Shown: in pieces, positions 31,021-42,145 of the stretch
Layout of the letters: each line of letters begins with the position of its first letter
Numbering within the stretch: the first letter of the stretch is position 1
Source: Mobula birostris
Lineage: Eukaryota
Direction of reading: 5' to 3'
NCBI RefSeq assembly: GCF_030028105.1
Contig: NC_092381.1
Location: 54,214,505 to 54,278,504, forward strand
DNA length: 64,000 bases
Made by a program: the position numbers and the translations under genes
Notes under the pieces: generated by a model
What the model was told of the DNA's origin: nothing
What the model saw: only the letters and a program-made list of their open reading frames with translations
Databases searched by the model: none

Positions 31021-31087
31021 ATGGCTCGCAATGAAGAGAAACAGCTGGGGAAACTGAATCGACTGTGGCTGCAGAGAGAGAAGGAGG
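31021..31087 (+). CDS. ISY1-like uncharacterised gene, exon 1 (MARNEEKQLGKLNRLWLQREKE)
   Basis: ATG in good Kozak context (gacgATGG) at the end of a CpG island; donor GTAGG at 31088, phase 1. Confidence 0.85.
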
Positions 31088-33039
31088 GTAGGAAACCTAC
31101 GTGAATACACGTTTCATTGTCTATAAGCGTGCTTGGAAACACCAGTGAGTTTGTCTGTGTGAGGAGAACCCCCGGATTGTAGCCACCGTCAGTGCTCCGC
31201 CGCCCGGAATGAATTGAATGCAGTGTGGCTTATTTCCCCAGTAGGATAACTGCAGGACTCATTTTAAATGGTTCTGCTTATGCAATCAAAATCTGGTTAA
31301 TATCATCGGTATATGTCGTGAAATTTGTTGTCTTTGCGGCAGCAATGCAAAACATAATAAAGACGTGTGTGTATGTGTATATATATTTAGTAGTAGTGAT
31401 TCTTAAATATTGGCAAGATAGATGCAGGGTTTTCCCTAGCTGATGAATTTAAGTAGTCGTTCATCTCAGAAATAGGTGTTTACTATTTAGGACTGGAACA
31501 AGGAGCAAGTTCTTAAAGGTCTAGCTGCAGAAATCTCAGGATGGTGTATGTCCAACGTGTTGTAAGGAGAGAGACTAAGGGATTTGACTGGGGTGGGGGA
31601 AGAATGGGTAGGTGATCTGTCAACAGTGAGAACACCTTTGCTGGTTCCCAGTAATGGGGTCCACATTGGCTAGGATGCAGCCCTGTGTCTCAGCATTGAG
31701 TGCCTGCTCCTGCCACCCAACACCAGTTCTCATGGGCAACAGCTGTACATTGCCTTTGTTGCTCGCTGTCCACCAAACCATTCATTTCATTGATCTGGGA
31801 GTTCCCTCAACTGGGTTCCAGGCATGACAGCACAAAACTGGGAAAGGCAGGGTTTTGTGATATGTTATCCACACTGCATTGCTGTCACAATCACAGCTCA
31901 CTATATAAAATGCCATAATGACCAGCTTTTGCAGCTAATTTCACACGTTCTTCTGTGCTAAGTGCATTGGAAATATCAAACACCCTTTGATGGTATAGCA
32001 TGAAAAGGTGTTGAGTGAGAAGATCAGGAATGGTCCTGTTGAGTGCAGATCAGTCTCAGGGAGTATTTGTATAAAAAATCTTTCCACAACTTTTTCATGA
32101 TAGGGACTATGCCATGGTTTTTCTATAACATTTCTTCATCGTCACATGATGCTGTCTTACATACACTGCACAACAAATGGATGAAGAGTTCTGTCTTTGA
32201 TTTCAAGTTAATGCTGGCCATCAGGTCACAATGAGACCATTCTCAGTCAGGCTTTCGGCTTCCAATTATTCTGTAAATTTCAGACCCACACTGAGTCTGC
32301 AATTCAGAGAATAGAAAGTCAAGTAAGCGAACTGTCAAAATTGAGCCCAACGGGTTCTGGATTTTTGCTACAGTTTCAGTGTTGTTCCAAATTTGATGAG
32401 AAGATAAATCCTGTTTTCTTAGAACCAATTTCTTCCTGTGCCTTATTCTCTCCTCCACTTAAATAATACAACATTTATAATCCAGATCAGGGCCAACGCA
32501 TTTGGCCTGTTGTATCCAGGTTATAGGTGTTCCACAACAACATTCATTTTCCAATTCACCAGTTCCGTTGCATTCTAGTTATTGATATTAGGCCAGTCAG
32601 GAAGAGACTGCTGAAAAGCTGCCCCAAGTGAGTCTTATGACCATATCTCTCCACACTGACTTAACATGGGCCTCTAGTTATCTTCTGTTACTATAGTAGC
32701 AACTTACTCCTCTGTCTGCTTGAGGTTTCTAGTGTTCATTGGTTCTTTTCCTATCACAATCAGATGACACTGTTGTTACGTTCATTTTTTTTCATCTCTC
32801 TAACCCTGAAACCCAGTAAATCTAGGAAGCTCCTCAATGAGAATGAGAGAATGTTATTTTGAAGCATTGTTCCATTTATTTCATGATGGTCTAACTTCTA
32901 GTTATGCTTACTTCACAGTATAATTGTGGCTGACAGCTTCTCAAAAATGCTCCTTTTTGTTGCATTCCTAGGGACCTACTTAAACAGTTGACCAACCTTG
33001 CATATGGAACCTCCAAATGTTTCTCAAAATCAAAAGGTG

Positions 33040-33750
33040 GAGGACCTCCGCTGCATCAACCAGAAGTGGAATTTCCCGGTGGCCAGCCATTTTAAATCTA
33101 TTCCCATTTTGTCATGTCAGTCTGTTGCCTCCTCTTTTGTCACAATGAGGCTGCTTTCAGGGTGTAGGAGTAACACCTCATATTCCGTATAAGTAGTGTC
33201 CAACCTGATGGAATGAATGTCAATTTCTGGTCATTCTCCCGCCCCCACCTCCCCACATACACAACCTTCTACTCCCTACTCTGGCCTCTTATCTTTTCTC
33301 CTCCCCTGCCTATCGCCTCCTGCTGGTGCCCCTCCTCTTTCCTTTTCTCTCATGGTCCACTCTCCTCTTTCATCTTTCCCCAGCCCTTTACCTTTCTCAC
33401 CCACCTATCAATTTCTAACTAGCCCTTCTTCCTCTCATTTTATTCTGGTGTTTTCCTCTTCCTTCTCAGTTCTGAAGAAGGGTCTCAGCCTGAAGCATTG
33501 GTTCATTTCCAGAGAAGCTGCCTGACATGCTGAGTTTCTCCAGTGTTTCGTGTGTGTTGCTTTGGATTTCCAACATCTACAGAATATCTTTTGTACACCT
33601 ATCGCCTAACTTGTTCTCTTTCCTCTTCTCCCTACCCCTTCTTACTCTGGCCTCTTCATCCTTCCTGATGAAGGGTCTCAGTCTAAGATGTCAACCGTTT
33701 ATTCATTTTCACAAATGCTGCCTGACCTCAGTTCCTCCGGTGTTTTTGAA
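33040..33750 (+). mobile_element. Penelope-like fragments
   Basis: PVASHF GIY-YIG remnant; two decayed terminal-repeat copies (ctgaagaagggtctc, ctgatgaagggtctc). Confidence 0.7.
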
Positions 33751-34156
33751 CAGTCTAGCACACAGTTATCTGTTCTGGGGTCGTTATTTTTAACCTTTCA
33801 ACTGCCACAGGCCTTAAAATTGTTTGAGATATCTGGTCTTTCTATTTTGGGTTCTAGCATTCTGAAACCATAACTTTTACTATCGGCAACAGTGCTTTTA
33901 GCTGTTTGAGGTCCAGTGTCTGGAATTCCATTCCCAAACCTCTGCTTCATCCCCCTCTAAAATGTAACACTTTGAATAACCTTTTAGTCATTCCTAGTAT
34001 CATAGTTTGACCCCTTGTCATATTTTGTTGCTATTGCTCTGTGAAGAAACTTTGAAAATTTTACATTTCCTAACTCTCTAACTACAAAATGTTGTCATCC
34101 AAAATTTATTCATATCTGACCATCCTTCATCTCTGTATTTTTTTTTTGTTCAATAG

Positions 34157-34197
34157 AGGGCCGTCTAAGAGAGATCCATCAAAATCGACCCAAACTG
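34157..34197 (+). CDS. ISY1-like gene, exon 2 (EGRLREIHQNRPKL)
   Basis: Poly-T tract plus caatag acceptor; donor GTGGGT; phases 1/0 fit the flanking exons. Confidence 0.8.
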
Positions 34198-40412: not shown

Positions 40413-40731
40413 GAAGCACAACATTTATTAGTCCAAGTTAATAAAATTTAAAGAGAGAAAGAAAATGTGTGAAAGCAATTTGAAGTATATAAAGAGTTTC
40501 TTTTGTAAAGGTTTTTTAATGTTATGTTTTAATCACACATCTGTCTAGAGAATGTCTGATCTATTTTCAGCATTTTCCTTTATTGGTTTAGATTTACAGC
40601 ATCTGTAGTGTTTTTGTTTTTATATAATTATTCCATTTACCCACATTCTTCATGTCTAAGCTTGTTTTTGATCAGAAACTGAAGTGTCAACAAAATTTGC
40701 GATAAGAAGACATGCTCTCACTCCTTTTCAG

Positions 40732-40915
40732 CAATCACAGCTATCCCATTACTCAGAACGGAAAATCAAGGAATTCCAGGATCACATTGAAGAGCTTCAG
40801 AAAGAGTATCGGTGTTTCTTGTGGAAACTCCGTAGCTTAGATCCTTCCCACAAAGAGCATCCTTGGAAACCCCGTGCTTACACACGCAAAAGAGTACCCG
40901 ATATCAACCAACAAG
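40732..40915 (+). CDS. ISY1-like gene, exon 4 (QSQLSHYSERKIKEFQDHIEELQKEYRCFLWKLRSLDPSHKEHPWKPRAYTRKRVPDINQQ)
   Basis: ctccttttcag acceptor; AAG|GTATCA donor; coiled-coil-like helix; lies in ORF 40684..40947. Confidence 0.85.
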
Positions 40916-41684
40916 GTATCAAAACTAAATACTTGAGAAAAAGTTAGATAATGGGTTATCAGAATTTTACTACATTCATTGTTTAACTTCCGTGTCCTCT
41001 GTATAATACAGGAGGAGCATTTTAATATGTTAAATGTCATGAGGTATTTGTGAGAGATAATGTTAACAAAAGAAGCAAAACAGGAACTACATTCAGCAAA
41101 GGATAAATTATCTTTCCTTGACTAAGCTTAATAAATCACTGAATCCTACTATGAAAGTGCCATTTAATTTTTGGAAATCTATTTCCTGCCTTTCACATAA
41201 TTAACTGGCAGCCTCTAATTGCTAATGATCATTTTGTGCAGGATGGACCTGGCTAATTTCATCTGTGCCATGTTACTTTGTCTTCAAAGCACTTTTCTGT
41301 GCATAGTCTCTGACAAACGCATTTTCATGCCGAACCTTTAAAAACTTCATTTTGTAAATATTTATTTATACAATTCTTCATCTGACAAATAATGGTATCC
41401 TTCATTAAGCTTTAGCCTTTCACTTAGATTTATTCAAAAATTTCATATTGTATATTTTTCTAGCAACTTGATCAGAAAATTCCACATTACATAATGTTAT
41501 TTGGAATGATTGAATTAAATTAATATTTACTTCGGCGGAAAATCTAGATGGCTTATTTTAACACGCAATTTTTTTTATCATGCTCTGAAAATTTTAAGCT
41601 TTAAGGTGGTGTTTACTGTTTCTGGTATTTCTGATTATTAGCACCAGTGTTCTCATTTCTAAATTGTTTTTTTTTCATATGCAG

Positions 41685-42145
41685 CTTCTTTGCACAGTTT
41701 GAAACGACCATGCATGCCTCAATTAATTGAAGCAGAAGATGCGTCTCACAAATATGACATTGAAGATTCTGATGAAGGCAGTAAAAGGAGCCACCTCAGC
41801 CCACATATTTCAGATGGCATTATCTATGACTGTTCTGTAGTTAACCCTGATTTTCAGGACCAACCTCTAACTTTTAACTCTGATCGGCTTCCACCAAGAT
41901 TTTCTATGCACTTAACTTCCAAAAACTCATTGGGAGAGCCATCACACCATTTGACTGAAATTCTTTTGTCTCAGCTACCAAATTTACAAGCCTCCTCTTC
42001 CCATGGTACCATAAAAGAGTTGGACAAAGAGGAAGAACAAATACAAACTATAGAGATCAGGGATAATTCCTTGGTGTCTATCTCACAGACAAAAACCTCT
42101 AGGATTCTGGGATTATCTTGCTATTCTTCAGATGAAGATTTATAA
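41685..42145 (+). CDS. ISY1-like gene, terminal exon 5 (low-complexity/acidic tail ending LGLSCYSSDEDL*)
   Basis: tttttcatatgcag acceptor in phase 1; open to TAA at 42143-42145; spliced CDS 828 nt = 275 aa. Confidence 0.8.

What the first reader, a model, noticed from the sequence alone, without database searches (positions are those of the whole stretch)
31021..42145. Hidden five-exon gene encoding a divergent paralogue of the spliceosomal factor ISY1
Seen: five exons with canonical splice sites and compatible phases give an intact 275-aa protein behind its own CpG island; the ORF track shows only pieces of exons 4-5. Knowledge: ISY1 (NTC/step-I factor) begins MARNAEKAMTALARF...EEGKVKERRPFLASEC...KWRRQIIGEI...QIQNAGLGEFRIRDLNDEINKLLREK...RIKEL. 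This protein keeps the same spaced pattern (MARN.EK...L.R; EEG; RP.L.S; KW...I..EI; E.+I....D.I..L.+E; +L..L) but is far more diverged than a vertebrate ISY1 orthologue should be, and it has an unrelated acidic tail. Inference: an ancient second ISY1-fold protein that could act as an alternative or competing branching factor, for example tissue-specific or minor-spliceosome-associated. I recall similar uncharacterised fish proteins and no mammalian equivalent, but did not verify this.
Basis: partly seen in the sequence, partly recalled or inferred. Interest (0 to 1): 0.8.

Follow-up and report, generated by a model that had tools for sequence, protein, structure and literature searches.

The report
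Ancient ISY1-like gene, already catalogued
This is a real, spliced and transcribed five-exon gene for a 275-residue protein that keeps only the front part of the splicing factor ISY1; the family is found from sponges to amphibians, turned up in no amniote, is already listed in databases as "uncharacterized", and its function is untested.

Summary
Five + strand exons (31021-31087, 34157-34197, 35173-35247, 40732-40915, 41685-42145) have GT..AG introns and phases that fit, and give 275 codons plus stop behind a CpG island. Translated one by one, they match the 275-aa RefSeq protein "uncharacterized protein si:dkey-86e18.1 [Mobula hypostoma]" at 271 of 273 residues. So the gene is not hidden. Contigs of public runs carry the E1-E2 and E2-E3 joints and an end that runs on into exon 4. 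They also carry an extra 107-nt exon (32972-33078) with an in-frame stop.

The ISY1 reading is supported. 14 of 16 natural family members pass Pfam's Isy1 threshold, but only over model positions 1-98 of 253. A family profile finds ISY1 chains and almost nothing else in the PDB. The AlphaFold model's best structural matches are ISY1 chains.

The family reaches sponges, Trichoplax, cnidarians, molluscs, amphioxus, fishes and amphibians. No amniote appeared in two searches.

The N-domain corresponds to ISY1's branch-helix clamp. ISY1's SYF1-binding C-terminal part is replaced by a disordered tail with short conserved motifs.

Function is inferred, not shown. The most likely role is an alternative or competing occupant of the ISY1 site in the catalytic spliceosome. 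A true ISY1 in this genome was not checked.

The parts
30601..31400 (.). CpG-island promoter region around exon 1
   Evidence: CpG observed/expected 0.88-1.04 in four 200-bp bins, against 0.28 for the window.
30714..30849 (+). 49-bp tandem repeat, 2.8 copies, inside the CpG island; the unit contains CACGTG and TGACGTG
   Evidence: Tandem Repeats Finder score 179, 83% matches. A promoter role is inferred only.
30884..31020 (+). 5' untranslated part of exon 1 (minimum extent)
   Evidence: A contig of run X5 lies on 30884-31086 and continues across the E1>E2 and E2>E3 joints (tables 5 and 8).
31021..31087 (+). Exon 1 coding part: 22 codons plus 1 base, the M-A-R-N-E-E-K start
   Evidence: Sequence. 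Pfam Isy1 model positions 1-22, E 0.037, 14.1 bits, below the cut-off when taken alone. 22 of 22 identical to P0112. Donor GT at 31088.
32972..33078 (+). Alternative 107-nt exon between E1 and E2; it shifts the frame and has an in-frame TGA after five whole codons (candidate poison exon)
   Evidence: GT..AG joints 31086>32971 (runs X1, X2) and 33077>34156 (X2 only); both runs are from one study. Translation in the incoming frame reads TYLNS*. Sequence.
34157..34197 (+). Exon 2 (41 nt), holds the R-P-K-L element
   Evidence: 13 of 13 whole codons identical to P0112. Joints 31086>34156 (X5) and 34196>35172 (4 of 4 runs).
35173..35247 (+). Exon 3 (75 nt), holds K-K-W-I-P-S-I
   Evidence: 25 of 25 identical to P0112. 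The loose end behind 35247 in X19 equals the start of exon 4.
40732..40915 (+). Exon 4 (184 nt), third helix of the N-domain and the P-W..R.Y element
   Evidence: 61 of 61 identical to P0112. phmmer found 102 representatives with E<=0.001, placed at residues about 62-120 of 250-300-aa proteins.
41685..42145 (+). Exon 5 coding part (461 nt with TAA): disordered tail with Q-D-Q-P-L-T-F, L-L-S-x-L-P-N-L and the end L-G-L-S-C-Y-S-S-D-E-D-L
   Evidence: 150 of 152 identical to P0112. Motif conservation. pLDDT mostly below 60.
42538..42543 (+). ATTAAA, candidate poly(A) signal (another lies at 42219)
   Evidence: Pattern scan. The 1334-nt contig of X2 would end near 42552 by arithmetic (282 + 645 + 407 nt).

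Best explanation
A real, transcribed, conserved protein-coding gene: the ray orthologue of the uncharacterized family known by the zebrafish name si:dkey-86e18.1. SHOWN: its first ~100 residues are a three-helix domain homologous to the N-terminal domain of the splicing factor ISY1. It includes the near-invariant M-A-R-N-x-E-K start, R-P and K-W. The rest is a disordered Ser/Thr-rich tail unrelated to ISY1, with a few short conserved motifs (Q-D-x-P-L-x-F; L-L-S-x-L-P-N-L in vertebrates; a C-terminal L-G-L-x-(C)-Y-S-S-S followed by acidic residues). The family dates at least to the base of animals and turned up in no amniote. INFERRED: in ISY1 the N-domain is the clamp whose N-terminus enters the active site and docks the branch helix, and the C-terminal helices tether ISY1 to SYF1 and the U2 snRNP. 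This protein keeps the clamp and lacks the tether. I therefore propose that its N-domain occupies the ISY1 N-domain site on the catalytic (B*/C) spliceosome, and that its tail motifs recruit or hold it through other partners. It would then act as an alternative to, or competitor of, ISY1 at the branching step and alter branch-site use or proofreading. The extra exon with a stop codon suggests that its level is set by unproductive splicing. About 0.97 for the shown part, about 0.5 for spliceosome binding at the ISY1 site; the single figure given is for the whole statement.
For: Gene model: (271 of 273 residues identical to the annotated 275-aa P0112). Transcription and splicing: (E2>E3 joint in 4 of 4 runs, E1>E2 in 1 of 4, loose end into exon 4). 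Homology to ISY1: Pfam Isy1 is above the 25-bit cut-off in 14 of 16 natural members scanned, at 27.4-42.2 bits and always on model positions 1 to 94-100 of 253; P0112 itself scores 42.2 bits, E 9.2e-11. With the family profile against the PDB, 6 of the 7 sequences at E<=1 are ISY1 (thermophile 4.3e-6, human 8.4e-5, yeast 0.053), each over residues 1 to about 95. Fold: helices 4-22, 42-63 and 70-97 with pLDDT 85-95 over residues 31-100. The eight best Foldseek rows are ISY1 entries, and the five best VIA-align rows, Z 8.6-9.7, are from ISY1 or spliceosome entries. Constraint: the ray N-domain is 47% identical to a sponge's and 53% to a mussel's, while the tail is 10-11%. Thirteen columns are invariant in 129 sequences: A2 R3 N4 E6 K7 L12 N13 R14 W48 P50 Y68 W106 Y111. 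[quoted passage not shown] The N-terminus of Isy1 sits in the active site of B* (passages). [quoted passage not shown] In-frame stop in the alternative exon.
Against: No experiment or interaction data exists for any member. A full-text search for the gene symbol found 0 papers. The ISY1 similarity is modest: 24-26% identity, single-sequence E 0.016 against human ISY1. Foldseek gave no match at E<=0.001. Unrelated helical hairpins reach Z 8.4, close to the ISY1 rows. Two of 16 members (jellyfish, thrips) give no Pfam hit at E<=0.01. The joined window protein itself was not scanned or folded. The family-specific invariants (L-N-R, W-I-P, Y68, W106, Y111) could mark a different binding surface. 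The runs are only guessed to be RNA and were contigs, so levels and tissues are unknown. The alternative exon with both splice sites was seen in one run only. I did not show that this genome also has a true ISY1.
Confidence: 0.5

Rival explanations
1. The ISY1-like N-domain has been put to use outside the spliceosome's catalytic centre, for example in another RNA-protein complex or as a plain helical protein-binding module. The similarity to ISY1 would then reflect ancestry only.
For: Family-specific invariant residues are absent from the ISY1 consensus shown in the alignments. The tail shares nothing with ISY1 or with any Pfam family or solved chain. Helical hairpins of this kind are common.
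Against: The residues at the extreme N-terminus are the ones kept invariant from sponge to ray. In ISY1 the N-terminus is the part that enters the active site. That is hard to explain unless the target is an equally invariant partner such as the catalytic RNA core.
Confidence: 0.3
2. It is a pure decoy or inhibitor. It binds the ISY1 N-domain site, cannot be held by SYF1, and so lowers branching efficiency rather than providing an alternative productive clamp.
For: It lacks the part of the Pfam model (positions 99-253) that in yeast contains the SYF1- and Lea1-binding helices. Its own transcript has a stop-containing alternative exon, which fits a dose-sensitive factor.
Against: The conserved tail motifs argue for partners of its own rather than a bare plug. 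No functional data favours either view.
Confidence: 0.15
3. It is simply this species' fast-evolving true ISY1 orthologue and not a second gene.
For: NCBI names two shark orthologues 'pre-mRNA-splicing factor ISY1 homolog'. I could not search this genome for another ISY1.
Against: The same protein type is about 45-50% identical in its N-domain between ray, sponge and Trichoplax, but only 24-26% identical to human, yeast or thermophile ISY1, so it forms a clade of its own. It lacks 60% of the Isy1 model in every member scanned. Zebrafish papers use a separate gene symbol isy1, while this family carries si:dkey-86e18.1.
Confidence: 0.03
4. It is not a functional gene: a chance ORF chain or a decaying pseudogene.
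For: None beyond the short exons that ORF lists miss.
Against: Intact frame, canonical sites and a CpG island. Spliced contigs in 4 of 4 runs. 271 of 273 identity to an annotated protein, and conservation across animals.
Confidence: 0.01

Closest known systems
ISY1 / Isy1p (NTC30), branching-step factor of the Prp19 complex and, in humans, subunit of the intron-binding complex with Aquarius, SYF1/XAB2, PPIE and CCDC16
   Same: An N-terminal domain of about 95-100 residues that starts M-A-R-N-x-E-K, has R-P and K-W at matching places, and has a three-helix layout. Pfam Isy1 model positions 1-98, PDB profile hits and structural matches.
   Different: Only 24-26% identity. Nothing corresponds to Isy1 model positions 99-253, which in yeast include the helices that bind SYF1 and Lea1. 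It has its own invariant residues (L-N-R, W-I-P, Y68, P-W..R.Y) and an unrelated disordered tail with its own motifs. It was not found in amniotes, whereas human, yeast, C. elegans and a thermophilic fungus all have ISY1 in solved spliceosomes.
si:dkey-86e18.1 (zebrafish locus name) and its 'uncharacterized protein' orthologues, e.g. the 275-aa protein of Mobula hypostoma (P0112)
   Same: This is the same gene: 271 of 273 residues, same length, collinear exons. Same motifs.
   Different: Two residue differences (positions 141 and 219). The stop-containing alternative exon 32972-33078 is not part of that protein model.
YJU2 (CCDC94) and YJU2B (CCDC130), two related human branching-factor proteins (recalled, not checked here)
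   Same: A precedent for a step-one factor that clamps the branch helix existing as two paralogues in animals.
   Different: Both of those are present in mammals and have been seen in spliceosome preparations. This family has no experimental record at all.

Membership tests
Pfam Isy1 (PF06246) domain family in the broad sense | Score above the curated 25-bit cut-off against the Isy1 model | tested here: met
   P0112 differs from the window protein at 2 of 273 compared residues and scores 42.2 bits, E 9.2e-11. 14 of 16 natural members pass. The window's exon 1 alone gives 14.1 bits, below the cut-off. The joined window protein was deliberately not scanned.
Pfam Isy1 (PF06246) domain family in the broad sense | N-terminal M-A-R-N-x-E-K start and a helical N-domain that can be superposed on ISY1 chains | tested here: met
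   Alignments. Model helices 4-22, 42-63 and 70-97. 9l5s_CV: Z 8.8, rmsd 1.6 over 68 residues. 6ff7_w: Z 7.8, rmsd 1.0 over 56 residues. Unrelated hairpins score nearly as high, so the fold match alone is not decisive.
True ISY1 orthologue (spliceosomal NTC/IBC subunit) | Full-length match to the Isy1 model, including the C-terminal part that tethers ISY1 to SYF1/XAB2 | tested here: not met
   All 14 matching members cover only model positions 1 to 94-100 of 253. PDB profile hits stop at about residue 95. The tether role of the C-terminus comes (passages).
True ISY1 orthologue (spliceosomal NTC/IBC subunit) | It is the single Isy1-domain gene of the genome (one-to-one orthology) | not testable with these tools
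No tool reaches the rest of this genome. Indirect: zebrafish has a separate symbol isy1.
True ISY1 orthologue (spliceosomal NTC/IBC subunit) | Physical presence in B*/C spliceosomes | not testable with these tools
   Needs purification or cryo-EM. No paper on the family was found.
si:dkey-86e18.1-like family (ISY1 N-domain paralogue) | Collinear full-length similarity to annotated members | tested here: met
   Exons map to P0112 residues 1-22, 24-36, 37-61, 62-122 and 124-275, 271 of 273 identical. Exon 4 finds 102 representatives.
si:dkey-86e18.1-like family (ISY1 N-domain paralogue) | Family-specific invariants and tail motifs (L-N-R, W-I-P, Y68, P-W..R.Y, Q-D-x-P-L-x-F, C-terminal L-G-L-x-C-Y-S-S) | tested here: met
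   Invariant columns in 129 sequences, the conservation line, and the same letters in the window's exon translations.

The most novel reading that the evidence does not exclude
Most animals, but not amniotes, carry a second ISY1-type clamp that plugs into the catalytic centre of the spliceosome in place of ISY1's N-domain. It would be delivered by its own short-motif tail rather than by SYF1. That would give a subset of spliceosomes different branch-site choice or proofreading, with its dose held in check by a stop-containing exon. If so, a core-binding splicing factor has been missed because the proteins whose spliceosome structures turned up here (human, yeast, C. elegans, a thermophilic fungus) are all ISY1 itself, and no amniote showed a member of this family.
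Probability: 0.3. Interest if true: 0.75.

Novelty: new variant of a known kind. Interest (0 to 1): 0.5.

Why it matters
ISY1's N-domain is one of only three protein elements (with Yju2 and Cwc25) reported to clamp the branch helix into the active site. A second protein has kept that domain under strong constraint since the base of animals: 47% identity between ray and sponge, and an invariant N-terminus. It has exchanged the NTC tether for another tail, which makes it a plausible built-in modulator of the branching step. No amniote showed a member in the two searches, and no paper on the family was found, which may be why it has no experimental record. The family is directly testable in zebrafish or Xenopus.

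Tried and rejected
Exon-wise searches gave little. Exon 3 had no Pfam hit. Exons 4 and 5 gave only sub-threshold matches (KIF21A_4th 19.3 bits against a cut-off of 33.1; Gal_mutarotas_3 19.3 against 27), which I take as chance coiled-coil or low-complexity matches. 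Exon 4 alone against the PDB found only designed coiled coils and myosin rods.

The bacterial promoter/terminator scan of the 3' flank is irrelevant to a vertebrate gene and was not used.

The ESM Atlas returned three clusters of this same family at scores 0.77-0.79. That is under the tool's 0.9 mark, so it is a lead only, and it returned no structure search.

Literature: 'dkey-86e18.1' gave 0 papers. 'ISY1' plus 'paralog' gave 39 papers, 15 listed, none about this family by title or abstract. 'ISY1-like / isy1l / Isy1 domain' gave 9 papers.

I could not obtain a true ISY1 sequence as a stored protein. I therefore built no ISY1-versus-family tree and ran no same-genome or same-species reciprocal test. 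The claim of paralogy rests on domain coverage, identity levels and the separate zebrafish gene symbol.

The minor-spliceosome idea was rejected as unsupported. The family turned up in no amniote, yet amniotes have a minor spliceosome (recalled).

'No amniote' has limits. Both searches list only the best 120 of 289 and of 225 hits, and see only proteins 0.55-1.75 times the query length. Of the 102 representatives I looked up 30; 23 carried an organism name and none was an amniote. Unannotated relics or pseudogenes in amniote genomes were not searched.

Full report
THE OBSERVATION. The window is AT-rich vertebrate DNA with CpG depletion (observed/expected 0.28). It contains one clear CpG island at 30601-31400, where observed/expected is 0.88-1.04.

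Reading the sequence and a script gives five + strand exons: E1 31021-31087, E2 34157-34197, E3 35173-35247, E4 40732-40915 and E5 41685-42145. The ATG has A at -3 and G at +4. All four introns (3069, 975, 5484 and 769 nt) begin with GT and end in a pyrimidine tract plus AG. Exon-end phases are 1/0/0/1, and the coding length is 828 nt, that is 275 codons plus TAA.

INDEPENDENT SUPPORT FOR THE MODEL. Exon 4 alone (61 residues) was scored against 1.84 billion representative proteins. It found 102 proteins with E<=0.001, of which 39 had E<=1e-10. In the full-length ones (250-300 aa) the match sits at residues about 62-120, which is where the model puts exon 4.

A word-index search with the best hit listed a 275-aa RefSeq protein, 'uncharacterized protein si:dkey-86e18.1 [Mobula hypostoma]' (P0112). 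The five exon translations, taken separately as whole codons, map in order to its residues 1-22, 24-36, 37-61, 62-122 and 124-275. Of 273 residues, 271 are identical; positions 141 and 219 differ. Residues 23 and 123 are the two split codons. So the model is right, the window comes from this ray genus or a very close relative, and the gene is not hidden. It is annotated there and in well over a hundred other species.

TRANSCRIPTS. One run search found 22 runs holding parts of 40732-42145. All are kept as contigs, and their RNA nature is only guessed. Three runs of one study hold 0.42 of the sampled words. The exonic share of that stretch is 645 of 1414, or 0.46, which is what spliced RNA would give.

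I laid four runs from three studies on 30400-35400:
- The GT..AG joint 34196>35172 (E2>E3) is in 4 of 4 runs.
- The joint 31086>34156 (E1>E2) is in 1 of 4 (X5).
- In X19 the contig that crosses E2>E3 runs on behind 35247 with 30 letters identical to the start of exon 4 (compare).

Runs X1 and X2 (one study) show E1 joined to 32972 instead. In X2 the same 1334-letter contig leaves that piece at 33078 and joins E2, E3 and beyond. In X1 the contig runs on into the intron. This extra 107-nt exon (32972-33078, AG before it and GT after it) shifts the frame. Read in the incoming frame, it has a TGA after five whole codons. It is a candidate poison exon. Contigs cannot say how common it is, and both of its splice sites were seen in one run only.

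WHAT THE PROTEIN IS. Exon 1 alone touches Pfam Isy1 model positions 1-22 (E 0.037, 14.1 bits, under the 25-bit cut-off).

Natural full-length members settle the question. P0112 scores 42.2 bits (E 9.2e-11), with residues 1-98 on model positions 1-98 of 253. In all, 14 of 16 members scanned pass the cut-off at 27.4-42.2 bits, and every match is limited to model positions 1 to 94-100. A jellyfish and a thrips member gave no hit at E<=0.01.

A single member against all PDB sequences has human ISY1 as its best hit (E 0.016, residues 1-96 against 1-93). A profile of 38 members gives 7 sequences at E<=1. Six of them are ISY1: thermophile 4.3e-6, human 8.4e-5 and 9.5e-5, yeast 0.053-0.059. Each match covers residues 1 to about 95. 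The seventh is a methyltransferase at E 0.84.

AlphaFold2 on P0112 with 129 aligned members gives three confident helices at 4-22, 42-63 and 70-97, with pLDDT 85-95 over residues 31-100. The rest is largely disordered (mean pLDDT 64.9, pTM 0.38).

Foldseek against the PDB has no match at E<=0.001. Its eight best rows (E 0.02-0.4) are all ISY1 chains or entries that one search lists as holding ISY1. In the VIA-align re-scoring, the five best rows are the NMR 'Isy1 domain' 1x4t (Z 9.7, rmsd 8.7, 88 aligned), 9l5s_CV (Z 8.8, rmsd 1.6, 68 aligned), 7b9v_G, 8ro1_D and 5lj3_G (Z 8.6-8.7). Unrelated helical hairpins follow at Z 8.4, so the fold match only corroborates the sequence evidence.

A FAMILY OF ITS OWN. 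In 129 aligned members the invariant columns are A2 R3 N4 E6 K7 L12 N13 R14 W48 P50 Y68 W106 Y111. M-A-R-N-x-E-K, R-P and K-W are shared with ISY1 in the printed alignments. L-N-R, W-I-P, Y68 and P-W..R.Y are specific to the family.

The ray N-domain (residues 1-113) is 92% identical to a sawshark's, 71-76% to bony fishes' and amphibians', 55% to amphioxus', 53% to a mussel's, 49% to Trichoplax's and 47% to a sponge's. The tail falls to 9-28% outside cartilaginous fishes. Identity to human, yeast or thermophile ISY1 is 24-26% or less.

The tail is Ser/Thr-rich (21%) and no more acidic than the N-domain (15% D+E in each). It keeps only short islands: Q-D-x-P-L-x-F, a vertebrate L-L-S-x-L-P-N-L with a small predicted helix, a weak T-P-(V/I/L)-L in many members (less clear in rays), and the C-terminal L-G-L-x-(C)-Y-S-S-S followed by D/E. 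No Pfam family or solved chain matches the tail.

DISTRIBUTION. Named members include:
- sharks, rays and a chimaera;
- bichir, paddlefish, gar, bowfin and many teleosts;
- coelacanth and lungfish;
- frogs, salamanders and caecilians;
- amphioxus;
- mussel, oyster, a gastropod and a chiton;
- Lingula, a priapulid and a thrips;
- a jellyfish and a coral;
- Trichoplax;
- two sponges.

Of the 102 representatives I looked up 30. Twenty-three carried an organism name, and none was an amniote. With a shark query (289 hits, best 120 listed) and a caecilian query (225 hits, best 120 listed) no bird, reptile or mammal appears. Amphibians score 1e-84 to 1e-61 with the caecilian query and the list runs down to 1e-48. 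Annotated amniote orthologues of ordinary length would have been listed. Relics, fragments or fusions were not excluded.

NCBI calls two shark members 'pre-mRNA-splicing factor ISY1 homolog', which on this evidence is a misnomer.

HOW IT MOST LIKELY WORKS. From passages of published structures:
- The Isy1 N-terminal domain is that clamp element.
- Two C-terminal Isy1 helices bind the N-terminus of Syf1 and bridge to Lea1 of the U2 snRNP, tethering Isy1 to the NTC (Wilkinson et al., bioRxiv 2020.09.22.306647, also Mol Cell 2021).
- The N-terminus of Isy1 is positioned in the active site of a B* complex (bioRxiv 500363).
- In humans ISY1 is a subunit of the intron-binding complex with Aquarius, SYF1/XAB2, CCDC16 and PPIE (PMC10208982).

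The family here keeps the clamp, with its extreme N-terminus frozen since the base of animals, and has lost the tether.

My best inference, at about 0.5, has two parts. The N-domain binds the same site on the catalytic spliceosome. The tail motifs provide a different route of recruitment. The protein would then replace or compete with ISY1 at branching.

The C-terminal serine cluster followed by acidic residues looks like casein-kinase-2-type phosphorylation sites. That rests on my recalled knowledge of the consensus and was not tested. The stop-containing exon fits dose control by unproductive splicing, as I recall for many splicing regulators.

Everything after 'keeps the clamp, lacks the tether' is inference.

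WHAT REMAINS OPEN. I could not search this genome for a true ISY1. The only indirect evidence is that a zebrafish study uses isy1 as a gene symbol distinct from si:dkey-86e18.1 (passages). No paper names the gene. Supplementary tables were closed and may hold expression data.

VERDICT. The gene is real, spliced and already catalogued. The ISY1-paralogue reading is supported. The functional proposals are untested, and the minor-spliceosome link is unsupported. It is a new variant of a known kind, an ISY1 clamp domain on a different tail, and of moderate interest.

Noticed in passing
window 32972-33078: Alternative 107-nt exon between exons 1 and 2 with an in-frame TGA. In two runs of one study it is the form in which exon 1 was assembled. 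It may be a poison exon.
   Followed up: partly
window 30714-30849: 49-bp tandem repeat, 2.8 copies, inside the promoter CpG island. Each unit carries CACGTG and TGACGTG-like elements. It may be repeated transcription-factor sites.
   Followed up: no
window 24102-26423 (+): Single uninterrupted 773-codon ORF upstream on the same strand, with a CARD domain (E 7.3e-9) followed by many ankyrin repeats. It looks like an intronless or large-exon CARD-ankyrin gene.
   Followed up: partly
window 33239-33739 and 34408-35075 (introns 1 and 2): Contig depth in the thousands and many repeat-type joints in all four runs, so these are abundant interspersed repeats. Reverse-transcriptase-like ORF fragments also lie in intron 3 (about 39176-40247) and at 59048-60493.
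   Followed up: no
related proteins P0106, P0107, P0135, P0022, P0188, P0224: Database labels that mislead. Two shark members are named 'ISY1 homolog'. A Xenopus cluster carries the UniRef name 'OMA1 zinc metallopeptidase'. Some fish models are fused to a TNF-like domain (PF00229) or share a cluster with a 'PIM2 kinase, partial' entry. These are probably merged neighbouring genes.
   Followed up: no
It is unrelated to this gene and I did not examine it.
   Followed up: no
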